Of a DNA stretch of 64,000 bases, positions 7,103 to 51,438 are shown one piece after another (position 1 is the stretch's first letter; every line of letters begins with the position of its first letter). The position numbers and the translations under genes are program-made. The stretch covers positions 174,220-238,219 of IMG/VR virus record IMGVR_UViG_3300021962_000021. One strand, 5' to 3'. The notes below the pieces were generated by a model that was not told the origin of the DNA, did no database searches, and worked only from the letters and a program-made list of their open reading frames with translations.

Positions 7103-7644
7103 TGAGTAAGCCAGAATTTTCACCATATAAGGATGAATTGACAAAAGCAATGAATTTTCTTTCTGAAAAAGAGGATACGGTTTTCATTGGACAGCAAATA
7201 GTTTATGCCGGAAATCCAATGTCAACTACATTGAATGATGTTCCAAAGGAAAAAATGATTGAAGTTCCTGTTATGGAAGAAACACAAATGGGAATGAGTT
7301 TAGGACTTGCAATAACAGGTAAAACGGTAATATCATTTTATCCAAGATGGGATTTTTTAGTTTCCGCAGCAAATCAGTTAATTAATCATGCTGATAAATT
7401 TGAACATATGACCGGTAAAAAGGTCAATGTTATTGTTAGAGTCGGTGTTGGTAGTAAAGACCCATTGGATCCAGGTATTCAGCATAGAAACGATTATACC
7501 GATGAATTCCAATCAATTCTTCAATTTACAAAAGTTCATAAATTAAAAAAAATAGAAGATATTTATAAAATATATACTGAAGCATATGAGCAAGGTGGTA
7601 TTCATATAATAGTGGAATGGCCTGAATTATATTATAAAAACTAA
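7102..7644 (+). CDS. TPP-dependent enzyme beta subunit (transketolase/E1-beta pyrimidine-binding domain only)
   Basis: FIGQ, EVPVMEETQMGMSLGLA, AANQLIN, PGIQH motifs; 180 aa, no C-terminal domain. Confidence 0.8.
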   Translation: MSKPEFSPYKDELTKAMNFLSEKEDTVFIGQQIVYAGNPMSTTLNDVPKEKMIEVPVMEETQMGMSLGLAITGKTVISFYPRWDFLVSAANQLINHADKFEHMTGKKVNVIVRVGVGSKDPLDPGIQHRNDYTDEFQSILQFTKVHKLKKIEDIYKIYTEAYEQGGIHIIVEWPELYYKN

Positions 7645-21689: not shown

Positions 21690-21869
21690 ATGTTGATTGT
21701 AAGTGTAAAAGGTGGTAACATAGAAGGTGCATTAAAAGAATATAAAAAGAAAGTTCAATCCGTAAAACAAATTGAACAATTAAGAGAAAGAAAAAATTAC
21801 ACCAAACCATCTGTAAAAAATAGGTTACAAAAAGAAGAAGCTAAAAGGAAAAATAAATTATTTTTTTAA
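21690..21869 (+). CDS. rpsU: Ribosomal protein bS21 (phage-encoded), 59 aa, not in ORF track
   Basis: MLIVSVKGGNIEGALKEYKKKVQSVKQIEQLRERKNYTKPSVKNRLQKEEAKRKNKLFF: NI..ALK.YK.K, LR.R and KPS motifs; MLI start as in Bacteroidota bS21. Confidence 0.9.
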   Translation: MLIVSVKGGNIEGALKEYKKKVQSVKQIEQLRERKNYTKPSVKNRLQKEEAKRKNKLFF

Positions 21870-41658: not shown

Positions 41659-43419
41659 ATGGCAAGAACAAACTTATCATTAGGTAACTTATATAGAGCA
41701 GTGAGTGGTTCGGCTAGACCGGGAGCAGTTTCATTAGGTGGACTTGCTGGTGGTAGTGCGGGTAGTAATGTAAATTTACTATCTTTTGCAACAAATGAAA
41801 TAACGGTGACTCCACCAACTTATACTTATATAGTAGAAAGTACAACGGAAAATGCACAATTTTCATTTACACAAACCGGTTCTTATTTTTACAATAAAGT
41901 TCAACAACAATTAGCAAACTTTACTTGTTCATTTAATAACGCAAATTTCTCAACAGGTTCAAATACATTCGGAACAGGTCCAACGATAGTTCCAATTACT
42001 CCTGCAGGTATAAATCAATCATCATACTCGGAGGCTTCAGCTGTTTTAACAATGAAGTATCAAGATGGTTATAATATAAATGCAGCTAATTATGGAACTG
42101 TAACAACCAAAACTTTATATGCGGTTGATGTCTATAATACGATTAACCAACCTGATTTCTGTTTGTTATTTGGAACCAAAGTAACAAAAGCAAACGGAAC
42201 GGAAGTTAATGTTGAAGATTTATCTGTTGGTGATACAATTAAAGCATGGGTTCCTATGGGATTACCTGATGAATCATTACCAACGGAAACGGAAGAAGTT
42301 GAATGGAGATTTCATATGTTAGAAACAGCAACGGGTTCATATGAAGAAGTGGTGATATCTGATATTGTATTTAACTTTGCAAGTGGATATTATCAAATTA
42401 ACGATGGATTAATAAAAGCAACAGGAACTCACCCAATTTATGTTTGGGATGCTGAAATTGAAAAATATAGATTTAAAAATATGGAAGATGTTCTACCTGG
42501 AGATTTGGTAGTAACATTTGATGAGATATCAGGATTGACAGAGGTGGAAGTTTATGATATTGATACTATAATAGAAGATGTTGAAATTGTAACAATTAAT
42601 GTTGAAAACGCCGATGTTTATTTGGCAAATAAAACAATTTCTCATAATAAAGGAACAATTACTCAACCATTTATTCCATCATCTGGATTAAGAATGTATA
42701 TGGACCCATCAAAAGCATATTCATTCCCATCACAAACACTTCCATCAACAGGCACACCAACAACGGATTGGTTAGATTTGAGTGGATATAATACCGGTGT
42801 AAGACCTTCTGGAGTTGCAAACTCGGCAGGATATAGTGGAACTTCACCAGCATATAATGCCGGAGCAACTAGAATTGATAAATATTTTACATTGGATGGT
42901 AGTGGAACTTTTTGGTTTAAAGATAGAAACTCAAATATCAATGGTGGTATTACTCAATTTGATGTTACGGCGATGACATTTGTTGCATGGGTTAGACAAA
43001 CTGCAAACCAAGGTGCAACTTATGGTGGATTGTTCTCAAAAGAAGGTGCGGATAGAGATTACAATTTTTATTTATATAGTAGTGGTGCATCTGCATGGGA
43101 TGGTTTCCATTTTGCAACTGCAAGAGGAACGGTTTCAAATTCAGTTCAAACATTTTCTGCACCAGCATTGAATACATGGCATATGGTGGCAGTTACAATA
43201 TCAGCAGCAGCTGGTATAACATATTATTTAAATGGTAGTAGTGTAGGAACGGGCACAGTTTCGGCATTTAACGCAACATCTACTTATGATATTAAATTGG
43301 GTAGAGCTGATAATTATGCAAAATGTCAATTAGGACCTACTTTATTTTATAATAGAGTATTATCCGCAAGTGAGATTTCACAAGTATACAATTATTTCCA
43401 ACCAACATATAGACCGTAA
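41659..43419 (+). CDS. Virion-associated protein with central Hint (intein-like) domain and C-terminal LamG/ConA-like domain
   Basis: CLLFGTKV...VEDLSVGD...ATGTHP...ISHN Hint motifs; T..AWV...WHMVAVT...YLNG...YNRVLSASEI LamG motifs. Confidence 0.8.
   Translation: MARTNLSLGNLYRAVSGSARPGAVSLGGLAGGSAGSNVNLLSFATNEITVTPPTYTYIVESTTENAQFSFTQTGSYFYNKVQQQLANFTCSFNNANFSTGSNTFGTGPTIVPITPAGINQSSYSEASAVLTMKYQDGYNINAANYGTVTTKTLYAVDVYNTINQPDFCLLFGTKVTKANGTEVNVEDLSVGDTIKAWVPMGLPDESLPTETEEVEWRFHMLETATGSYEEVVISDIVFNFASGYYQINDGLIKATGTHPIYVWDAEIEKYRFKNMEDVLPGDLVVTFDEISGLTEVEVYDIDTIIEDVEIVTINVENADVYLANKTISHNKGTITQPFIPSSGLRMYMDPSKAYSFPSQTLPSTGTPTTDWLDLSGYNTGVRPSGVANSAGYSGTSPAYNAGATRIDKYFTLDGSGTFWFKDRNSNINGGITQFDVTAMTFVAWVRQTANQGATYGGLFSKEGADRDYNFYLYSSGASAWDGFHFATARGTVSNSVQTFSAPALNTWHMVAVTISAAAGITYYLNGSSVGTGTVSAFNATSTYDIKLGRADNYAKCQLGPTLFYNRVLSASEISQVYNYFQPTYRP
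42160..42648 (+). other. Hint domain (163 aa, no endonuclease), BIL-like
   Basis: Cys1 at 42160, block B TGTH, terminal His-Asn at 42643-42648 followed by Lys. Confidence 0.8.
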
Positions 43420-43488: not shown

Positions 43489-45732
43489 ATGGCAGAGAAA
43501 TTAGTATCACCAGGCGTATTTACTAAAGAAAACGACCTTTCGTTCTTACAACAAGGTATTGCTGATATTGGTGCAGCATTCATCGGACCTTTCAAAGAAG
43601 GACCATTAGTTCCGACAATTGTAAACTCACAAGCTGAATTCCAAACTCTTTTTGGAGCAGCTGATGACACATATTATACACCATTAGCGGTTCAAAACTA
43701 TTTAAGAGAAGCGGGGGTTGCAACTATTTGTAGAACTGCAGGAGTTGATGGATATACAGGATATAATCCATTATTGATAACTATTACATCTGGTTCATCT
43801 GGACAAACTACAGGTTTAGTATCATCATCAGTAGCGATACTTTTCCCAACTGATAAAAATACTTTAACAAGTGGTTTAAGTGGTTCGGCAGCAACAACAG
43901 CTGGAAATAATAATTTAGGAAGTGGTAATATCATTATGTTTGTAACGGGTTCGAGTAATTTTACAGGAACTGCATCAGTTGATTATAGCAACACAAACGA
44001 TGTTGAATCTGTATTTGGAACAAATCCATTGGGTGCAAAGGGTGGATATGTATACGGATTTTTTAAAAACCACGGAATTGCATTTGGTGCAACTGTATCA
44101 TCTTCGGTTTCTGTTTTAGATGACCAAGATTTTACATTTGAAGCACAAGAAGCTTTAACACCAATGATTGTATCACAATTAATAAGTGGTGAAAGACATA
44201 ACCTTTTCCAATTTGAAACAATCGGTGCAGGTAATGCAGCAAATACAAAAATAAAAGTAGGTATTTCAAATATAAAAGCAGCTGGTTCGGTAAACGGAAC
44301 AGATTACGGAACATTCACAGTAACTATTAGAGATTTCGCAGATACTAATAAGAAAAAGACAGTATTAGAAACATTTGCAAATGTAAATTTAGACCCTAAC
44401 TCTCCAAATTTTATTAGTAGAGTAATCGGTGATAGAAAAAGAACAATTGCATCAAGTGGAAAAGTAACAGAAACAGGTGATTGGGTAAACAATTCAAAAT
44501 ATGTTAGAATTGCAAATCTAAATACAGTATCTCCTATTCAAGCAGTTCCATTCGGACATGCTAAATACAAATTACCAGTTGTAGCAGGAGCATATAATAA
44601 TTTAATACCAACTGCATCATTTGTAACATCATCAGCAACACAGTTTGGTGGTATTGATTTGGATAACAATACTGATAATAAAATTTATTTAAAACCAATT
44701 CCAGCAGGAGCAGGTAATGGTTCAAACGCAATCTTTGGTTTGGATTCAGCTGCAACAAACGGAGTAGCATTGGCAGTAGGTTCAACTTCAGCACAATATA
44801 TCGTAGCATTCCAAGAAGGATTTGATGGATATTCACCAGCAACTGCAGCAGCGGATGTTGTTGACCCAGCATCTACTGAAGGTATTGCATCTTATGGTAA
44901 GCATATCGCAGCATTATCTAACGCTGACGAATATGATATCAATATGGTAGTAGCACCACACGTAAACAGAAGATTACATTCATCTGTATTTACTTCAATA
45001 CTTGATATGGTTGAAGGAAGAGCAGACGCATTCTTCATCGCAGAAGCAGGTGATTCAGCAACAACTTTAGCACAAACTGTAACACAAGCAGGTGAAGTAG
45101 ATACTAACTACGCAGCATTCTACTATCCATATATCAAAACAATTGATACAAACACAAACAAACTTATCACAGTTCCACCATCAGTATTATTACCAGGTGT
45201 ATTCGCAGCAAACGATAGAGTAGCAGCTGAATGGTTCGCACCAGCAGGTTTAAATAGAGGTGGTTTAGTAGGAGCAGTAAGTGTATTAGATAAAGTAACT
45301 CAATCAGAAAGAGATACATTATATGAAGGTAAAGTAAACCCAATCTGCCAGTTCCCTGGACAAGGTATCGTAGTATGGGGTCAAAAAACTTTACAAGATA
45401 AACCATCAGCATTAGATAGAATCAATGTAAGAAGATTATTATTGACTGTTAGAAAGTATATCGCTTCAACTTCAAAATATTTAGTATTCGAACAAAACTC
45501 TTCTGAAACAAGAAATAGATTCTTAAATATTGTTAATCCTTATTTAGAATCAATCCAACAAAGACAAGGTCTTTACGCTTTCAGAGTGGTAATGGATGAA
45601 ACAAACAACACACCGGATGTAATTGATAGAAACATTTTAAAAGGAGCTATCTACTTACAACCAACTAAGACAGCTGAATTCATTCAAATTGATTTCAATA
45701 TCTTACCAACTGGTGCAAGTTTTAACGGATAA
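43489..45732 (+). CDS. gp18: Tail sheath protein (gp18-like)
   Basis: SPGVFTKEND, WFAPAGLNRG, WGQKTL...ALDRINVRRL, FEQN, PTKTAEFI. Confidence 0.95.
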   Translation: MAEKLVSPGVFTKENDLSFLQQGIADIGAAFIGPFKEGPLVPTIVNSQAEFQTLFGAADDTYYTPLAVQNYLREAGVATICRTAGVDGYTGYNPLLITITSGSSGQTTGLVSSSVAILFPTDKNTLTSGLSGSAATTAGNNNLGSGNIIMFVTGSSNFTGTASVDYSNTNDVESVFGTNPLGAKGGYVYGFFKNHGIAFGATVSSSVSVLDDQDFTFEAQEALTPMIVSQLISGERHNLFQFETIGAGNAANTKIKVGISNIKAAGSVNGTDYGTFTVTIRDFADTNKKKTVLETFANVNLDPNSPNFISRVIGDRKRTIASSGKVTETGDWVNNSKYVRIANLNTVSPIQAVPFGHAKYKLPVVAGAYNNLIPTASFVTSSATQFGGIDLDNNTDNKIYLKPIPAGAGNGSNAIFGLDSAATNGVALAVGSTSAQYIVAFQEGFDGYSPATAAADVVDPASTEGIASYGKHIAALSNADEYDINMVVAPHVNRRLHSSVFTSILDMVEGRADAFFIAEAGDSATTLAQTVTQAGEVDTNYAAFYYPYIKTIDTNTNKLITVPPSVLLPGVFAANDRVAAEWFAPAGLNRGGLVGAVSVLDKVTQSERDTLYEGKVNPICQFPGQGIVVWGQKTLQDKPSALDRINVRRLLLTVRKYIASTSKYLVFEQNSSETRNRFLNIVNPYLESIQQRQGLYAFRVVMDETNNTPDVIDRNILKGAIYLQPTKTAEFIQIDFNILPTGASFNG

Positions 45733-45779: not shown

Positions 45780-46268
45780 ATGCCAGAAATATTAGAGTTT
45801 GATAAAATGTTCTATAAGAATTTTGAACCAAAGTTAGGTAACAGATTCATTATGGAAATCAATGGTATCGAATCATACATCATCAAAACTGCAAGTAGAC
45901 CAACTTTCACTTCAGAGGTAGTAGAATTAGACCACATCAATGTAAAGAGAAAGATTAAAGGTAAATCAACATGGGATGATGTGAATATTACCCTTTATGA
46001 CCCAATTGTTCCTTCTGGAGCACAGCAAGTTATGGAGTGGATTAGAACTTCACATGAGTCATTAACAGGTAGAGATGGATACGCAGCTTTCTATAAGAAA
46101 GATATTACATTCTATCTATTAGGACCAGTTGGTGATAAAGTTGAACAATGGACTTTAAAAGGTGCATTCATCACTTCAGCAAACTTCGGTGAGTTGGATT
46201 GGGCATCAAATGATCCTGTTTCAATTGAATTAACATTGGCATACGATTACGCAGTATTAGAATACTAA
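45780..46268 (+). CDS. gp19: Tail tube protein (gp19-like)
   Basis: Follows the sheath gene; GKSTWDDVNITLYD, YKKDI, WTLKGAF...GELDW, LTLAYDY. Confidence 0.9.
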   Translation: MPEILEFDKMFYKNFEPKLGNRFIMEINGIESYIIKTASRPTFTSEVVELDHINVKRKIKGKSTWDDVNITLYDPIVPSGAQQVMEWIRTSHESLTGRDGYAAFYKKDITFYLLGPVGDKVEQWTLKGAFITSANFGELDWASNDPVSIELTLAYDYAVLEY

Positions 46269-46365: not shown

Positions 46366-47181
46366 ATGGAACAAAACATTGAACAACAAGTTACAAGAGG
46401 ATTGGGACAACCGGTTACAACACAAACTAAAACTTACGATTTCCCAACAGAAATTATAGCATTACCATCAAAAGGACTTTGCTACCCTGAAAATTCACCA
46501 TTAGCAAAAGGTGAAGTAACAATTAAGTTATTAACTGCAAAAGAAGAAGATATTCTTACTTCTCCAAATTTAATTAAAAGAAACCAAGTAATTGAAAAAT
46601 TATTAGAATCTGTTTTAATTGAGCCAGGAGTAAGAGTTGATGACCTTTTATTGGGAGATAAGAATGCAATTCTTATTGCAACTAGATTGTTGGCATATGG
46701 TCCAGAATATAAAATTAAAGTAACGGATAAAGAATACGGAGAAGAAGTAGAGTGGTCAGTAGACCTTTCAAAAATTCAAATTAAAGAAGTTGATTATTCT
46801 TTATTGAATAGAAGAAATGAATTTACTTATACATTACCACATAGTAAAACTCAAATAAAATTTAGGTTATTAACACATGGTGATGAAGCAGCAATTACTA
46901 AAGATGTAGAAGCAGCTGAAAAAATTACTAAGCAAAGTAATGAAATCACAGCAAGATATAGACGAGTTATCACCGAAGTAGATGGTAACAGAGATATGGG
47001 ATATATTAGTAATTTTGTAACTAATAAATTGCAAGCTAGAGATTCAAAAGAATTAAGAAAATATATCGCATCTGTAACACCTGATTTGGATTTTAAATTT
47101 GAATACACATCACCTTACACGGGCGAAACGGAGGCGCTTCCTATACCATTTGGGAGTGACTTTTTTTATCCTACCGAGTAA
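46366..47181 (+). CDS. Tail/baseplate-hub assembly chaperone (gp26-like)
   Basis: LPSKG..Y, TAKEEDIL, L..GD.NAIL...R...YG, ends FF; lies between tube and tape measure. Confidence 0.75.
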   Translation: MEQNIEQQVTRGLGQPVTTQTKTYDFPTEIIALPSKGLCYPENSPLAKGEVTIKLLTAKEEDILTSPNLIKRNQVIEKLLESVLIEPGVRVDDLLLGDKNAILIATRLLAYGPEYKIKVTDKEYGEEVEWSVDLSKIQIKEVDYSLLNRRNEFTYTLPHSKTQIKFRLLTHGDEAAITKDVEAAEKITKQSNEITARYRRVITEVDGNRDMGYISNFVTNKLQARDSKELRKYIASVTPDLDFKFEYTSPYTGETEALPIPFGSDFFYPTE

Positions 47182-47392
47182 TTATTCTATAATTTTACAT
47201 GATAAGATTTTTCAAATGCTATACTACTCCAATGGTAGTTTTACATGGCATGATGTTTACTTTATGCCAATTCGTTTGAGAGAATTTTATTGGAATAAAT
47301 TAATAGAAGCAAAAGAAAAAGAAAAAGAGGCCAACGATAAAGTATTGGCTAAATCAAAAACAACAACATCTTCTAGAACAAGGAGAAGATAA
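47162..47392 (+). CDS. Probable frameshift-expressed C-terminal extension of the tail chaperone (GT-like)
   Basis: The +1 frame from the T7 run reads FFILPSNYSIILHDKIFQMLYYSNGSFTWHDVYFMPIRLREFY; first in-frame ATG only at 47216. Confidence 0.6.
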   Translation, partial: FFILPSNYSIILHDKIFQMLYYSNGSFTWHDVYFMPIRLREFYWNKLIEAKEKEKEANDKVLAKSKTTTSSRTRRR

Positions 47393-47438: not shown

Positions 47439-47738
47439 ATGTCTAATAGAAAATATTTGTATGAAGTATCATTTGTTAAAAGATTAATAAATGGATTCTT
47501 AGGAGCAAAATCACAAGAAAAAGAAGATAGTTTTTTAGATGTTCTAAAAAAGCATGATGATGAATTGGCGGCAGTATTTGGTGACTTTAATGATAGATTA
47601 GACAGATATAATAAAGATGTTAGTTCTAGACTTGGGAAGAATGTAAAAGCTATGGATGTAAAAGATACACAAATATACAAAGCTTTAAATCGTTACATGG
47701 AAGAATCTATTAATAGAAGAATTAATAAGAAGAAATAA
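47439..47738 (+). CDS. Hypothetical protein
   Basis: 99-aa ORF after a late motif, directly before the tape measure gene. Confidence 0.6.
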   Translation: MSNRKYLYEVSFVKRLINGFLGAKSQEKEDSFLDVLKKHDDELAAVFGDFNDRLDRYNKDVSSRLGKNVKAMDVKDTQIYKALNRYMEESINRRINKKK

Positions 47739-47751
47739 TTTTTCCTAAATA

Positions 47752-50700
47752 ATGGCATCAGCAGAAGAAAAAAAACTACAAGCATTACAGAAGTCCAGAC
47801 AGTTAATGTTGGATAATTTATCTTTAATGAAGCAGACACAAGCTGCTCATAAAGCTGAATATGATGCTGCTGTCGAATATACAAAACAATGGGAATCATA
47901 TTACTCTATAATGAGTGATAATGAAAAGAAAGCATTTGATGCTAGAAAGAAAATGATAGCGGATTATGATAAAGCCGCAAAAGGTATTCAATCAGTAAAT
48001 AAAGGACTTGAAGAAAACGCAAAACAATCCAAAAGAGCAACTCAAGAAGTTCAAAAACAAAAGAAAGCAATTGAGGAATTAAGAAAAGAAACCAAAGCAA
48101 TGGTTAGTGACCAATCTCAGTTAGTTAAGGGATTGGAAAAAATGAACGACGCTTTTAAGGGTACTAGTAAAACGCAGCGTGTAATAAATACCGGATTTGC
48201 TCAACTTGAAGTTTCATTATCAAATGTAAATAAAGCAATTGGTGATGGAAAAAAATTACATCAAGATGAATTAAAAGAAATTCAAAAATACAAACAAGCT
48301 TATAATGATTATTCTACATCAATAGCAGATGTGCAAAGACAAGTTGCAGAAAAAAACATATCAGAAGAACAAGCTATTGAATTGATAAAAAAGCAAAGAG
48401 AAGCATTCAATGATGTATCTAAGGGATTAAAATTAACAACTGAAGAAGGTAAAAAAGTTGCAGCAGAAATTCAGGGAATGGTTTCACATGCCGATGAATT
48501 TGGAAAAAAATTAGAAGGGGTAAATAAAAAGGCTGCAAACATAAAATCAGGTTTTGAAGAAATAAAAGGACAAATTGGAGGAATGCTACCAATGGGTAAG
48601 GAACTATTGGATGTATTTAGTAAATTTGGTAAAGTTGGATTTGCAGGAGCACTTGCAGCATTAGGCGCAGCAGCTGGTAAATTTTTAAACGAAAGTGGTT
48701 TACTTAAAAAAGCATTACCTGGTATTAAAGACCGTTTGGATATTGAACAAGAGGGTAAGAGAGCAACATTTAATGAAGTTACTCAACCTTTACAAAGACT
48801 AGAATTTCAAACTGATGAAAAGTTTAAGAAAAAGTCATTTGCATTAGACCAACAATATGAAGCCAAAAGACATGGCATAACAATGGCTAATAAACAAAAA
48901 GAGTCAGCAATGACCTTTAAGAGTGAGGCTAGTATGGCATATTTTGGTAAAGCACTTCCTAATCTTGGATTTGCAGCAAATGAATTACAAAATGCAGGAA
49001 TTAGTGCGGATAATATTGCAGGAGCATCGGTGACCATTGCATCTCAAATGGGTGTGGGTGGAAAACAATCAGCAATATTGGGTGCTGAAATGGCAACATT
49101 TGCTAAATTTGCAGGAATAGGTGCAGAAGAAGCAACCGGTATATCCGAATCATTCAAATTAATGGATGGTGTGACTGCAGATACGGCAGCAAATATGATG
49201 CAAGGTGTTAAGGCAATGGCAGAACAATTAGACCTTAACCCAGGAGCAGTAATGAAAGAAATGGCTAATGCAAGTGAAATTGCATTAGAAATGAATATAA
49301 ATAGTGGAAAGGCATTAGCAAAGCAGGTATCATACGCATCTTCATTGGGCGTATCGTTCTCAAAGATAGCTAAAGCAGGACAAAGTATGGTATTGAACTA
49401 TAAGGATAGTATCAAAAAAGAAATGCAACTATCCGCTTTATTGGGTAAGCAAGTTGACCTTTCCGAAGTAAGAGCTAAATTTGCAGAAGGTGATACAACC
49501 GGTGCAATGCAGGCATTACAAGCACAAGGTTTAGACCCGGCTCAAATGGATATGTTCCAAAAGCAAGCATTGCAAGAGGCAACGGGTATGGATTTAGGTG
49601 AACTAACAAAGATTGGTAAAGGAGGTGGAAAATCAGCCGAAGCTTTGGATTCTGCTGCAAATAAAATAGATAAAGCAAGTATACATGCTGCAAATAAACA
49701 CCTTTTAGCAGCAGAAACTGCAAGACAGATATCTTTGGAAAATCAACAATTTGCATTACAACAGGCGGCAGCAGCAGCAAATTTCCAATTGCAATTAGAA
49801 CAAGATAAAGAACAATTTGAATTAGACCAGCAAAAAGCAAAGGAACAATTTGAAAACGATTTATCATTCGATAGAAAAAGACAAGAAATCGAATTACAAC
49901 AAGAGTTAGCCACTTTAGGAAATACTATACTTACACAACTTATCCCTGCATTATTAGCATTTGGTGCCGGTGGTGGATTTAGTGCATTGGGAGATTTGGT
50001 TGATATGATACCAGGCAAAAAAGGTAAAAAAGGTGGAAGAAGTAGGAGTAGAACAAATACAAATAAACAAAGTTCGGCTCAAAGAAGAAACACTGCAATG
50101 CAATCAAGACCGGCGCCTGCAACAGGTGGACCTGCATCAGCAACACCTGCGGCACCACCAACAAGAGCACAACAAGTTGCACAGATGAAGGCTCAGAATC
50201 CTGGTATGACATCGCAGCAAGCATTACAACAAGTTAAAGCTGCACCCGCAGGTGGTGCACCAAGCGGACCTGCGGCAGCTGCACCAAAACCAACCGGTGG
50301 AGGTGGAGGAGGGGCAGTTCCAAAACCAGCTGCAGCACCTGCGCCAAAATTAGCAGCACCTGCGGCACCATCTGTTCCACCTGCACCAAAAATCCCTGCA
50401 GCCGCACCTATTTCAACTCCTAAAATGAGTTTTTGGGATAAATTAAATCCTAAAAAATTCTTAGGTAATGTTATAGGTAAATCTGGTGGTGTATTAAAAG
50501 TATTGGGTTCGGTGGCCGGAAAAGTAGCAGGACCATTAGGAACTGCATTGGCAGGATTTAGTATGTATAAAGACCTTTCAGCATTGGTAACAATGAATGA
50601 AGGACCTTTGCCAGATTTATATAAAAATGTGGGTGGTAGTGTTATGGGATTGGTTGGTTCAATATTGGGTGGTGCACTTGGCGGAACATTTTTAGGACCT

Positions 50701-51438
50701 ATTGGAGCAATGTTAGGTAGTACACTTGGTTCGACCGTTTTTGGTTGGTTGGGTGATTTATTTCCGGGAGTTCCAACATTTTTAGGAGAATTTTTAGTTG
50801 ATACTTTGGGGTTATTTGGTAAACCGGGTTCAGCAGTTCCACAAACTACAGCCGGTGGCGGTGGCGGAGCTGCATCTGCACCATCAGCAGCAGGAACAAC
50901 ATCAAAAGCAACGGCAATTGTGGGAACTAGTCAAGCAGTTAAAGCAGCTGCAGCACCAACCGCAGCACCTGCAGGCGGTGGTACACCTGCATCTACACCG
51001 GCGCCAGCTGGCGGCGGAGCAAAAGTAGCTAGTCCTGGAGCAACAGGTACATCAACAAAGGGTTCTGCATTAGCAGGGGGAATGACCGGTATGTTAATGG
51101 GTGTTCAACTTCAAAAAATATTCGGACCAACAAATACTAAGACAGAAGGATTTATAGACCAAGCAAAAGTTGATTCTGCAAAACAAACTGCAGCAATTAT
51201 GCTACAGACGAAAACTATTACAAATTCTAAAGGATTACCAACGCAAAATACGGCAATGCAAGAACAACTCAATGATTTGATAAAAATAATGGCTACAGCA
51301 TATGGTAATCAAAGTGGAGAAGTAACAATTATGTTAGATGGTAGAAAAGTATCTAGAACGATAAATAAAGTAAATTCGAACAATAATCTAACGGGTGGTG
51401 ATAAGGGTGATAATGGTGGTAAAGGTGGTCCTGTATAA
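47752..51438 (+). CDS. Tape measure protein
   Basis: Long Ala/Gln/Lys helical protein after tube and chaperone; Gly-rich hydrophobic segments; C-terminal IMLDGRKV. Confidence 0.85.
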   Translation: MASAEEKKLQALQKSRQLMLDNLSLMKQTQAAHKAEYDAAVEYTKQWESYYSIMSDNEKKAFDARKKMIADYDKAAKGIQSVNKGLEENAKQSKRATQEVQKQKKAIEELRKETKAMVSDQSQLVKGLEKMNDAFKGTSKTQRVINTGFAQLEVSLSNVNKAIGDGKKLHQDELKEIQKYKQAYNDYSTSIADVQRQVAEKNISEEQAIELIKKQREAFNDVSKGLKLTTEEGKKVAAEIQGMVSHADEFGKKLEGVNKKAANIKSGFEEIKGQIGGMLPMGKELLDVFSKFGKVGFAGALAALGAAAGKFLNESGLLKKALPGIKDRLDIEQEGKRATFNEVTQPLQRLEFQTDEKFKKKSFALDQQYEAKRHGITMANKQKESAMTFKSEASMAYFGKALPNLGFAANELQNAGISADNIAGASVTIASQMGVGGKQSAILGAEMATFAKFAGIGAEEATGISESFKLMDGVTADTAANMMQGVKAMAEQLDLNPGAVMKEMANASEIALEMNINSGKALAKQVSYASSLGVSFSKIAKAGQSMVLNYKDSIKKEMQLSALLGKQVDLSEVRAKFAEGDTTGAMQALQAQGLDPAQMDMFQKQALQEATGMDLGELTKIGKGGGKSAEALDSAANKIDKASIHAANKHLLAAETARQISLENQQFALQQAAAAANFQLQLEQDKEQFELDQQKAKEQFENDLSFDRKRQEIELQQELATLGNTILTQLIPALLAFGAGGGFSALGDLVDMIPGKKGKKGGRSRSRTNTNKQSSAQRRNTAMQSRPAPATGGPASATPAAPPTRAQQVAQMKAQNPGMTSQQALQQVKAAPAGGAPSGPAAAAPKPTGGGGGGAVPKPAAAPAPKLAAPAAPSVPPAPKIPAAAPISTPKMSFWDKLNPKKFLGNVIGKSGGVLKVLGSVAGKVAGPLGTALAGFSMYKDLSALVTMNEGPLPDLYKNVGGSVMGLVGSILGGALGGTFLGPIGAMLGSTLGSTVFGWLGDLFPGVPTFLGEFLVDTLGLFGKPGSAVPQTTAGGGGGAASAPSAAGTTSKATAIVGTSQAVKAAAAPTAAPAGGGTPASTPAPAGGGAKVASPGATGTSTKGSALAGGMTGMLMGVQLQKIFGPTNTKTEGFIDQAKVDSAKQTAAIMLQTKTITNSKGLPTQNTAMQEQLNDLIKIMATAYGNQSGEVTIMLDGRKVSRTINKVNSNNNLTGGDKGDNGGKGGPV

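What the first reader, a model, noticed from the sequence alone, without database searches (positions are those of the whole stretch)
47121..47392. Tail-chaperone frameshift in the +1 (or -2) direction with an upstream SD-like element
The chaperone ends GAC TTT TTT TAT CCT ACC GAG TAA (T7 at 47161-47167). The overlapping ORF is in the +1 frame and sits where lambda G/GT-type extensions occur, which are usually -1 (Mu uses -2). GGGAG lies 4 nt before the T-run and GGAGG at 47130, within a GC-rich patch, recalling the SD-stimulated +1 shift of prfB. If real, it needs a free anti-SD, which links it to the phage bS21.
Basis: partly seen in the sequence, partly recalled or inferred. Interest (0 to 1): 0.72.

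Follow-up and report, generated by a model that had tools for sequence, protein, structure and literature searches.

The report
Conserved +1 frameshift in tail chaperone
A tail-assembly gene of this large freshwater phage very probably makes a short and a long protein from one gene by a programmed +1 ribosome slip on a run of seven T's, and comparison suggests that T4's long-puzzling gp26 and gp51 are the two-gene version of the same system.

Summary
ORF1 (46366-47181) is a T4 gp26-family protein lying between the tail tube and tape-measure genes. The +1-frame ORF (to 47392) encodes a conserved 74-residue helical domain.

In 235 of 244 related loci this domain lies in the +1 frame of the adjacent gp26-like gene. 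Its homology starts exactly at the Phe-Phe codons. In 61 of 159 distinct junctions no ATG/GTG/TTG start codon precedes it.

The slip motif is TTT TTT T in 149 of 159 junctions and TTC TTT T or TTT CTT T in the other ten. The common denominator is YUU_U, which favours a +1 P-site slip over a -2 shift or RNA polymerase slippage.

Other phages carry two paralogs instead, one short and one fused in frame at the same junction. T4 itself looks like that, with gp26 the short form and gp51 the long form. T4-like cyanophages reach the same domain by a -1 slip on T_TTT_TTC.

GGAGG at 47130 is invariant and specific to shifting genes, but it lies 26-29 nt upstream, so the prfB analogy fails. The GGGAG 4 nt upstream is not conserved. 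The link to phage bS21 is not supported.

No junction peptide or RNA evidence was obtained; the case is comparative.

The parts
46366..47181 (+). ORF1, 271 aa: T4 gp26-family protein, the short (zero-frame) product, in the position of a tail assembly chaperone
   Evidence: Pfam PF12322 T4_baseplate, 39.5 bits against a cut-off of 24.5. phrog_150, residues 24-267 on profile positions 10-232 of 282. Lies between the tube and tape-measure genes. AF2 model with pLDDT 88; the best PDB match is the HK97 tail assembly chaperone 2ob9, and it is weak (Z 4.7).
47130..47134 (+). Distal Shine-Dalgarno-like word GGAGG, 26 nt 5' of the T-run
   Evidence: Invariant in 77 diverse relatives, including two third-codon positions. 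An SD-core 5-mer is present at this distance in 150 of 159 shifting junctions, against 11% of background windows. Absent from 10 of 10 non-shifting paralogs. GGAGG is depleted in the window.
47152..47156 (+). Proximal GGGAG; its Gly codon GGG is at 47152-47154
   Evidence: GGGAG occurs in only 7 of 159 junctions. The Gly codon is GGG in 104 of 159, although GGG makes up 3% of Gly codons in this genome. Its role is unknown.
47161..47167 (+). Slip site TTT TTT T; the proposed P-site codon is 47164-47166, re-pairing on 47165-47167
   Evidence: T7 in 149 of 159 distinct junctions; TTC TTT T or TTT CTT T in the other ten. The 5' neighbour is never T (C 110, G 36, A 13). The +1 frame opens only 5 nt upstream of the P codon in 31 junctions.
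47168..47392 (+). +1-frame extension: 74 codons plus stop, a helical domain. The predicted trans-frame product is 267 + 74 = 341 aa.
   Evidence: Codon-position entropy of the 'spacer' after the ORF1 stop is periodic in the +1 frame, 0.78/0.33/1.02. The domain profile finds 914 proteins, including in-frame fusions to gp26-like proteins. AF2 model with pLDDT 82.7, three helices.
45780..46268 (+). Tail tube protein (T4 gp19-like)
   Evidence: PF06841 and phrog_4542.
43489..45732 (+). Tail sheath protein
   Evidence: phrog_23, PF04984 and PF17482.
47439..47738 (+). 99-aa ORF between the chaperone and the tape measure, function unknown
   Evidence: ORF list. Only a faint PHROG match. A small ORF sits at the same place in Mel-JY01.
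47752..51438 (+). Probable tape measure protein, 1228 aa
   Evidence: Position and size. 39% identity over 89 aa, E 2e-10, to the annotated tape measure of Flavobacterium phage immuto.
21690..21869 (+). Phage-encoded ribosomal protein bS21, 59 aa (context only; not shown to belong to the system)
   Evidence: PF01165, 48.8 bits. ORF listed.

Best explanation
ORF1 encodes the short form of a gp26-type tail/hub assembly chaperone. A minority of ribosomes slip +1 on the Phe-Phe codons: tRNA-Phe on UUU 47164-47166 re-pairs with 47165-47167. On the full U7 run both Phe tRNAs may move in tandem. These ribosomes then read ATC at 47168 and continue to 47389.

The result is a 341-aa long form with a 74-residue helical C-terminal domain. 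The two forms correspond to lambda G and GT. I infer that they also correspond to T4 gp26 (short) and gp51 (long, essential, absent from virions).

Shown by comparison: the shared frame offset, the site, the lack of an own start, and the existence of hard-wired fusions and of two-gene systems.

Inferred: that the shift is ribosomal, how efficient it is, and what the long form does.

The invariant GGAGG 26-29 nt upstream is tied to shifting genes and probably modulates the event, but how it does so is unknown.
For: 1. Frame and site. The domain lies in the +1 frame of the adjacent gp26-like gene in 235 of 244 loci, at 25-100% protein identity. Homology begins at the FF codons.

2. No own start. 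The ATG at 47216 is TTA, ATT or another codon in relatives. In 61 of 159 junctions the +1 frame has no ATG/GTG/TTG before the slip codon, and 145 of 159 have no ATG there. In 31 junctions a +1-frame stop lies directly 5' of ACT TTT TTT. In phage immuto the first ATG comes after the conserved domain.

3. The stretch after the ORF1 stop has codon periodicity in the +1 frame.

4. Slip motif. TTT TTT TAC 98, TTT TTT TGG 42, TTT TTT TAT 9, TTC TTT TGG 6, TTT CTT TGG 3, TTC TTT TAC 1. The common denominator is YUU_U. Runs of 3-4 T are short for polymerase slippage (from what is known of it, not tested here), and in these variants a -2 shift would lose re-pairing.

5. The 5' neighbour of the run is never T: GAC 74 against GAT 1, although GAT makes up 88% of Asp codons here. 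This avoids the -1 heptamer U_UUU_UUU.

6. Natural in-frame fusions of 288-318 aa carry the domain C-terminally. Their junction is ..DFF|G.., with two aromatic residues as in a +1 product.

7. Six independent contigs carry two gp26-like paralogs, one ending FFWPDA* and one fused. Every diverged in-frame case is such a two-gene system.

8. T4. gp26 and gp51 are collinear paralogs (BLASTP E 2e-6). Both fall in phrog_150, with gp26 ending at profile position 235 and gp51 at 280. Window ORF1 and the short paralogs end at 232-233, and the fusions at 273-280.

9. T4-like cyanophages reach a gp51-like ORF by T_TTT_TTC in the -1 frame in 55 of 55 junctions. This is a mirror image at the same Phe-Phe codons.

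10. gp26 and gp51 are described as hub assembly chaperones, and gp51 is not in the particle (PMC3004832).
Against: There is no direct evidence for the trans-frame protein. The RNA contigs found do not cover the junction, and no proteomics is available.

Polymerase slippage on T7, deleting one U, would give the same protein and cannot be excluded for the T7 clades.

No slow A-site codon and no known stimulator at a known spacing is present, so the mechanism of stimulation is open.

Homology of the extension to the T4 gp51 C-terminus rests on PHROG profiles and weak direct scores (E 0.0085 for 2 of 59 members; hhalign E 0.044). Direct hhalign against T4 gp51 was negative.

The tail-chaperone fold match is weak (Z 4.7). 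The test of binding to the tube protein gave no answer.

One relative, LR756508, has no YUU_U site but has its own ATG.
Confidence: 0.8

Rival explanations
1. Transcriptional slippage. RNA polymerase deletes one U (or adds two) on the T7 run, and ordinary translation of the edited mRNA gives the long form.
For: T7 is kept at exactly seven in 149 of 159 junctions, including synonymous positions. The product of a one-U deletion is identical to the +1 product. A G+C-rich patch precedes the run in the window's own clade.
Against: Ten junctions work with only TTC TTT T or TTT CTT T, runs that from general knowledge are too short for polymerase slippage. The cyanophage relatives use a textbook ribosomal heptamer in a fixed phase. 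No conserved upstream hairpin and no terminator-like site at the run. The phase of the run is fixed and T8 is strictly avoided, as expected if a ribosomal -1 slip must be prevented.
Confidence: 0.12
2. A -2 ribosomal frameshift on the T-run, as in phage Mu, giving ..DFFF-ILPS...
For: On T7 a P-site tRNA-Phe can re-pair perfectly two bases back. -2 is documented for Mu (PMC5009743).
Against: In the TTC TTT T and TTT CTT T variants a -2 shift loses re-pairing. Natural in-frame fusions have two, not three, aromatic residues at the junction.
Confidence: 0.04
3. ORF2 is an independent small gene translated from its own start: the ATG at 47216, or the TTG/GTG at 47150/47156 downstream of GGAGG.
For: The window has an ATG at 47216, and TTG/GTG codons 15-21 nt after GGAGG. 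Gene callers annotate such ORFs. LR756508 has an ATG in the overlap.
Against: The ATG is not conserved, and conserved residues lie upstream of it. 61 of 159 junctions have no start codon at all before the domain. The spacer is coding in the +1 frame from the run onward. The domain is fused in frame to gp26-like proteins elsewhere. The phage does not use SD sequences at its gene starts.
Confidence: 0.03
4. Artefact: a sequencing error or a recent frameshift mutation in an originally continuous gene.
For: Homopolymers are error-prone. One relative (L173) has a run one T shorter and reads in frame.
Against: The same offset and the same run occur in more than 150 distinct junctions from independent assemblies, including four near-identical contigs and three GenBank genomes. 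L173 also has another frame break in the gene.
Confidence: 0.01

Closest known systems
Lambda G/GT-type programmed frameshift of tail assembly chaperones (Xu, Hendrix & Duda 2004; review PMC5009743)
   Same: The gene lies between the tube (major tail) gene and the tape-measure gene. [quoted passage not shown] The second ORF has no start of its own. The arrangement is conserved despite low sequence similarity.
   Different: The direction is +1, not -1. The slip motif is UUU_UUU_U / YUU_U. The protein is a 271-aa T4 gp26-family protein, not a ~100-140-aa G-like protein, and the fold match to a solved chaperone (HK97 gp10) is only weak. An SD-like word lies 26-29 nt upstream. The ratio of products and the binding partners are untested.
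E. coli prfB (RF2) +1 frameshift
   Same: +1 P-site slip onto UUU from YUU_U (CUU_U in three relatives, as in prfB). A Shine-Dalgarno-like word lies upstream.
   Different: There is no stop codon in the A site (UAY or UGG instead). The conserved SD-like word is 29 nt, not 3 nt, from the P codon. There is no RF2 autoregulation.
Phage Mu tail chaperone -2 frameshift; haloarchaeal myovirus HSTV-2 (probable +1) (PMC5009743)
   Same: Tail-assembly frameshifts that reach the +1 frame in myoviruses.
   Different: Variant sites and fusion junctions here argue for +1, not -2. No sequence relation to Mu or HSTV-2 chaperones was detected.
T4 gp26 and gp51 (baseplate hub assembly chaperone / catalyst)
   Same: ORF1 is in the gp26 family (PF12322, phrog_150). 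The long form matches the gp51 type, which is a gp26 paralog with a C-terminal extension. gp51 is essential and absent from virions, like GT.
   Different: T4 encodes the two forms as separate, divergently transcribed genes and has no frameshift. T4 gene 26 also has an internal in-frame start, 26'. Sequence identity to the window protein is very low.
gp26-like / 'gp51-like' gene pair of T4-like cyanophages (e.g. Syn9 gp12/gp13)
   Same: Same gene pair. The extension is read from the Phe-Phe codons at the end of the gp26-like gene, and there is no start of its own before the conserved residues.
   Different: The direction is -1 on T_TTT_TTC, with an SD-like word 10 nt upstream (the dnaX-type spacing) and the stop one codon later. 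The records annotate it as a separate 47-aa gene.

Membership tests
PF12322 T4_baseplate / phrog_150 (T4 gp26 family) | Profile match above the curated cut-off over most of the domain | tested here: met
   39.5 bits against a cut-off of 24.5, residues 47-256 on profile positions 12-207 of 219. phrog_150 E 1.5e-14.
G/GT-type tail assembly chaperone with programmed frameshift | Located between the tail tube/major tail gene and the tape-measure gene | tested here: met
   Order is sheath, tube, ORF1/ORF2, 99-aa ORF, 1228-aa tape-measure-like gene. The order is the same in immuto and Mel-JY01.
G/GT-type tail assembly chaperone with programmed frameshift | Second ORF overlaps the 3' end of the first, lacks its own conserved start, and is conserved as protein from the slip site on | tested here: met
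   61 of 159 junctions without any start codon.
G/GT-type tail assembly chaperone with programmed frameshift | Conserved slippery sequence in the overlap | tested here: met
   A YTT_T site in 159 of 160 distinct junctions; T7 in 149.
G/GT-type tail assembly chaperone with programmed frameshift | Shift direction -1 on an X_XXY_YYZ heptamer (the usual case) | tested here: not met
   The offset is +1 in 235 of 244 loci. The -1 heptamer is actively avoided, since the 5' neighbour is never T.
G/GT-type tail assembly chaperone with programmed frameshift | Both products made, in a fixed ratio, and both needed | not testable with these tools
   Indirect only: two-gene systems with one short and one fused paralog. 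RNA contigs do not cover the junction.
G/GT-type tail assembly chaperone with programmed frameshift | Chaperone fold, and binding of the extension to the tube protein | tested here: inconclusive
   The best PDB match is the HK97 chaperone 2ob9, but at Z 4.7 and Foldseek E 0.39. Complex prediction of the extension with the tube protein gave 'no answer'.
prfB-type SD-stimulated +1 frameshift | P-site codon YUU followed by U | tested here: met
   UUU_U or CUU_U in 159 of 160 junctions.
prfB-type SD-stimulated +1 frameshift | In-frame stop codon in the A site at the shift | tested here: not met
   The next zero-frame codon is TAC, TAT or TGG. The stop comes 4-7 codons after the P codon.
prfB-type SD-stimulated +1 frameshift | SD-like sequence about 3 nt 5' of the P-site codon | tested here: not met
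   GGGAG near the run in 7 of 159 junctions. The conserved SD-like word ends 26-29 nt before the P codon.
Programmed transcriptional slippage | Homopolymer run long enough for polymerase realignment, in all members | tested here: not met
   Ten of 159 junctions have runs of only 3-4 T.
Programmed transcriptional slippage | Length heterogeneity of the run in RNA but not in DNA | not testable with these tools
   The metatranscriptome contigs found do not reach the junction, and contigs drop rare variants.

The most novel reading that the evidence does not exclude
The invariant SD-like word 26-29 nt upstream may be a new, long-range kind of frameshift modulator that works through the anti-SD of the translating or trailing ribosome. 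In SD-poor hosts such as Bacteroidota, where the anti-SD is normally sequestered, the ratio of long to short chaperone would then report the fraction of ribosomes with a free anti-SD. Separately, gp26/gp51 would be the long-missing G/GT system of T4-type phages, with the direction of recoding flipped between clades at the same Phe-Phe codons.
Probability: 0.2. Interest if true: 0.88.

Novelty: new variant of a known kind. Interest (0 to 1): 0.76.

Why it matters
Programmed frameshifting in tail-chaperone genes is a textbook case of recoding. It is described as conserved in long-tailed phages "except T4" (PMC5009743).

The evidence here suggests that the T4 gp26 family is that chaperone. A very large group of aquatic myoviruses makes a short and a long form by an unusual +1 slip on U7. 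The group has thousands of proteins in metagenomes and includes cultured Flavobacterium and Microcystis phages. T4-like cyanophages do the same by a classical -1 slip at the same codons. T4 and some others encode the two forms as paralogs.

This has three consequences:
- It corrects the annotation of hundreds of 'orphan' 50-100-aa ORFs.
- It offers a natural series for studying what sets the direction of a frameshift: +1, -1, hard-wired fusion and two genes.

The distant SD-like element is an unexplained signal in phages whose genes otherwise lack SD sequences.

Tried and rejected
- **RNA evidence.** 24 runs hold the locus, all as contigs. The four RNA runs laid cover parts of ORF1 and the downstream ORF but not 47010-47330, so they say nothing about U6/U8 transcripts.
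- **Conserved RNA structure.** RNAalifold on 77 sequences (-50..+45) gave -2 kcal/mol and only trivial pairs. Local hairpins in single clades are not conserved. I considered pairing of GGAGG with the CCUNCC after the run and dropped it, because there is no covariation and that stretch is inside the ribosome at the shift.
- **Terminator or known RNA family.** There is no terminator-like site at the run and no Rfam match.
- **Fold of the extension.** No significant match in BFVD and no PDB sequence match.
- **Binding of the extension to the tube protein.** The prediction gave 'no answer', which is evidence neither way.
- **Direct profile comparison with T4 gp51.** The extension against T4 gp51 was negative. 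Against cyanophage gp51-like proteins it was weak but in the same register. The natural-fusion profile against gp51 aligned only around the first CxxC. The link rests on the PHROG profiles.
- **More diverse gp51-like sequences.** A word-indexed search from Syn9 returned only close relatives.
- **Literature.** No paper in the held library describes a frameshift in gp26-family genes, or gp26/gp51 as G/GT.
- **bS21 link.** Rejected on co-occurrence.
Full report
**1. The observation**

The window (32% G+C) is the last 64 kb of a 238,219-bp virus record. Around the finding the + strand carries, in order:
- a tail sheath gene (43489-45732);
- a T4 gp19-like tube gene (45780-46268);
- ORF1 (46366-47181, 271 aa);
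- an overlapping ORF in the +1 frame, open from 47078 to 47392;
- a 99-aa ORF;
- a 1228-aa tape-measure-like gene.

- ORF1 ends GAC TTT TTT TAT CCT ACC GAG TAA;
- T7 is at 47161-47167;
- GGGAG lies 4 nt upstream of the run;
- GGAGG is at 47130;
- the second ORF is in the +1 frame.

The patch is built from codons that are rare in this genome. GGAGG is three-fold depleted in the window (16 against 46 expected). This is the only T7 on the coding strand in the 34 kb of late genes.

**2. What ORF1 is**

ORF1 is not a lambda-G-like protein by sequence. It belongs to the T4 gp26 family:
- PF12322 scores 39.5 bits against a cut-off of 24.5;
- phrog_150 'baseplate hub' matches as well.

T4 gp26 is listed as a hub assembly chaperone (PMC3004832). 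An AlphaFold model built on 50 homologs is confident (pLDDT 88). Its best solved neighbour, among 350,542 chains, is the HK97 tail assembly chaperone 2ob9. The match is weak (Foldseek E 0.39; Z 4.7 over residues 151-239), so I treat it as a hint only.

The family is very large, with 5114 proteins at E<=1e-3.

**3. The shift is conserved**

I fetched 80 + 80 + 80 viral contigs with relatives of ORF1, or of fused forms, plus three GenBank phages. I located the gp26-like part and the ORF2 domain with profiles. In 235 of 244 loci the domain lies in the +1 frame of the adjacent gp26-like gene.

There are 159-160 distinct junctions, and the following holds for them.
- Homology of the second ORF starts exactly at the Phe-Phe codons (..FF[T/I/G]LP.NYS..LH..IF..), not at an ATG.
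- The ATG at 47216 is TTA, ATT or another codon in relatives.
- In phage immuto the first ATG comes after the conserved domain.
- 61 of 159 junctions have no ATG/GTG/TTG in the +1 frame upstream of the slip codon, and 145 of 159 have no ATG.
- In 31 junctions a +1-frame stop sits immediately before ACT TTT TTT.
- The 34 nt between the ORF1 stop and the 'ATG' have the entropy periodicity of coding sequence in the +1 frame (0.78/0.33/1.02 bits for codon positions 1/2/3).

Independent initiation is therefore excluded as the general mechanism. The shift window is narrowed to the run and the four codons after it.

**4. Which kind of shift**

The motif, written as previous codon | P codon | next codon, has this distribution:

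| Motif | Junctions |
|---|---|
| TTT TTT TAC | 98 |
| TTT TTT TGG | 42 |
| TTT TTT TAT | 9 |
| TTC TTT TGG | 6 |
| TTT CTT TGG | 3 |
| TTC TTT TAC | 1 |

What all of them share is YUU_U. A P-site tRNA on UUU or CUU can re-pair one base forward on UUU, as CUU_U does in prfB.

In the ten variants a -2 shift would lose re-pairing. From general knowledge, a run of 3-4 T is also too short for polymerase slippage.

The 5' neighbour of the run is never T (C 110, G 36, A 13). The codon before it is GAC 74 times and GAT once, and AAC 21 times and AAT never, in a genome with 88% GAT and 74% AAT. This avoids U_UUU_UUU, a -1 slippery heptamer.

Natural in-frame fusions (section 5) have two aromatic residues at the junction, as the +1 product has, not three. 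For these reasons I rank the mechanisms as follows: ribosomal +1 slip first, polymerase slippage second (possible only in the T7 clades), and -2 last.

The predicted long form is residues 1-267 of ORF1 followed by 74 residues read from 47168, 341 aa in all.

**5. Both forms are needed: hard-wired relatives**

A profile of the extension, searched against 1.84 billion representatives, found 914 proteins. Most are 50-120-aa 'orphans'. At least ten are 288-318 aa with the domain at the C-terminus. Their N-terminal parts are gp26-like, and the junction reads ..DFF|G(M/I/L)...

The contigs encoding them carry two PF12322 genes:
- a short paralog ending ..FFWPDA* or ..FFWPDAGV*, the same C-terminus as ORF1 and the immuto protein;
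- the fused paralog.

Every diverged in-frame case (six independent loci) is such a two-gene system, and every +1 case has a single gene.

**6. T4 and the cyanophages**

T4 gp26 ends ..KEFFELL* with no +1 extension. Several results connect gp26, gp51 and the window's proteins.
- T4 gp51 is a collinear paralog of gp26 (BLASTP E 2e-6 over 161 residues).
- Both fall in phrog_150. gp26 ends at profile position 235 and gp51 at position 280 of 282.
- Window ORF1 and the short paralogs end at 232-233.
- The natural fusions run to 273-280, over the very residues that the extension profile matches.
- The C-terminal part of gp51 also matches phrog_634. So does the 'gp51-like' ORF of cyanophage Syn9, and so, weakly (E 0.003-0.0085), do two members of the extension alignment.

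In Syn9 and in 55 distinct T4-like cyanophage junctions:
- the gp26-like gene ends ..SFF(G/A/E)* with an invariant T_TTT_TTC;
- the gp51-like ORF is in the -1 frame;
- its homology starts at FF;
- the -1 frame is closed 0-30 nt upstream in 54 of 55 junctions (48 nt in the last);
- the first ATG is 20-21 codons inside the conserved region.

This is a classical -1 frameshift, and the record I inspected (Syn9) annotates the ORF as a separate 47-aa gene.

Direct profile comparisons between the two extensions are weak but in register. I take the homology as probable, not proven.

The picture is one ancestral short/long chaperone pair expressed in three ways:
- +1 slip (this clade);
- -1 slip (cyanophage T4-likes);
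- two genes (T4 and others).

gp51 is essential and absent from virions (PMC3004832), as GT is in lambda (PMC5009743). That review states that G-T frameshifting is conserved among long-tailed phages except T4.

**7. The SD-like elements**

GGAGG at 47130 is invariant in 77 diverse sequences. Two third-codon positions are fixed (NNG GAG GCN), while other third positions average 1.24 bits.

In wider relatives an SD-core 5-mer (AAGGA, AGGAG, GGAGG or GAGGT) starts 31-36 nt before the P codon in most junctions. It falls within -45..-20 in 150 of 159, against 11% of background windows in the same genes. It appears in different codon phases and encodes different amino acids, so it is an RNA-level element. 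It is absent from 10 of 10 non-shifting paralogs. The association with shifting is therefore good.

Its 3' end is 26 nt from the run and 29 nt from the P codon. That is far from the 3 nt of prfB or the 10-14 nt of dnaX, and no conserved RNA structure explains it.

The -1 cyanophage clade, in contrast, has an SD-like word 10 nt before its heptamer in 55 of 55 junctions, which is the classical spacing.

Even so, the Gly codon there is GGG in 104 of 159, against 3% genomic use. I cannot explain either element mechanistically.

**8. bS21**

The phage does encode bS21 (21690-21869), and its genes lack SD sequences. This fits a host that makes little use of SD sequences. For related bS21 phages the predicted host is Bacteroidota (PMC9723584).

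Co-occurrence does not support a functional link:
- immuto (complete genome) and a 92%-complete relative have GGAGG and the shift site but no bS21;
- two relatives with bS21 have the T7 site without the SD-like word.

Published phage bS21 proteins are thought to sequester the anti-SD as the host protein does. This one ends ..KRKNKLFF, and what that means for anti-SD binding cannot be decided here.

**9. Limits**

There is no direct evidence for the long form, its amount or its function. RNA contigs miss the junction. The complex prediction with the tube protein gave no answer. The extension is a small three-helix domain without informative structural neighbours. One relative (LR756508) lacks a YUU_U site and has an ATG in the overlap, so some lineages may have moved to independent initiation.

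I found no paper in the held library that describes this frameshift. Literature outside that library was not searched.

**10. Verdict**

It is a conserved programmed +1 shift in a gp26-family tail/hub chaperone gene, with mirror-image (-1) and hard-wired relatives that include T4 gp26/gp51. The prfB-like mechanism and the bS21 link are not supported. The distant SD-like word is a real, unexplained signal.

Noticed in passing
L251:2186-2392 (Synechococcus phage Syn9, record 7185-7391); L252-L331: In T4-like cyanophages the 'gp51-like' ORF is reached from the gp26-like gene by an invariant -1 heptamer T_TTT_TTC one codon before the stop (55 of 55 distinct junctions). An SD-like word lies 10 nt upstream. 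The Syn9 record annotates only a 47-aa ORF from an internal ATG.
   Followed up: partly
L165:10803-12229 (T4 genes 26, 26' and 51): T4 gp26 and gp51 are collinear paralogs (BLASTP E 2e-6; both in phrog_150). gp51 carries a C-terminal extension that gp26 lacks. Gene 26 also has an annotated internal in-frame product, 26'.
   Followed up: partly
window 21690-21869: Phage-encoded ribosomal protein bS21 (59 aa) ends ..EEAKRKNKLFF. It has a basic tail and two terminal Phe, and no Tyr at the position of F. johnsoniae Tyr54. bS21 is found in 6 of 11 related large records checked.
   Followed up: partly
window 1-64000: Gene starts are preceded by A/T-rich sequence without SD words (9 of 55 have a weak AGGA/GGAG). 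GGAGG is three-fold depleted. T7 runs are strongly strand-biased: many A7 but almost no T7 on the coding strand of the late region.
   Followed up: partly
window 47246-47269: A terminator-like hairpin, TGGCAT..ATGCCA, lies inside the +1 extension about 80 nt after the slip site. It is formed by the conserved W-H ... M-P codons and may be a by-product of coding.
   Followed up: no
L081:3755-3991, L082:3836-3946 (GenBank PP395634.1, MW353176.1): The extension is annotated as a separate 'hypothetical protein' in both cultured phages. In Mel-JY01 it starts at a TTG in the overlap. In immuto it is a 36-aa remnant starting after the conserved domain. Both look like mis-annotated trans-frame products.
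   Followed up: yes
L173:2402-3468: One relative of the TTC TTT T clade has one T fewer (TTC TTT GGC), so the extension reads in frame. The same gene has another frame break upstream, so this is probably an assembly error rather than a natural fusion.
   Followed up: partly
window 41659-43419: A 586-aa protein upstream of the sheath gene matches two 'virion structural protein' PHROGs in separate halves. It was not examined further.
   Followed up: no
window 49900-51000: The tape-measure-like protein has long Ala/Pro/Gly-rich low-complexity stretches. Three overlapping GGAGG words at 50299-50312 come from Gly codons there.
   Followed up: no
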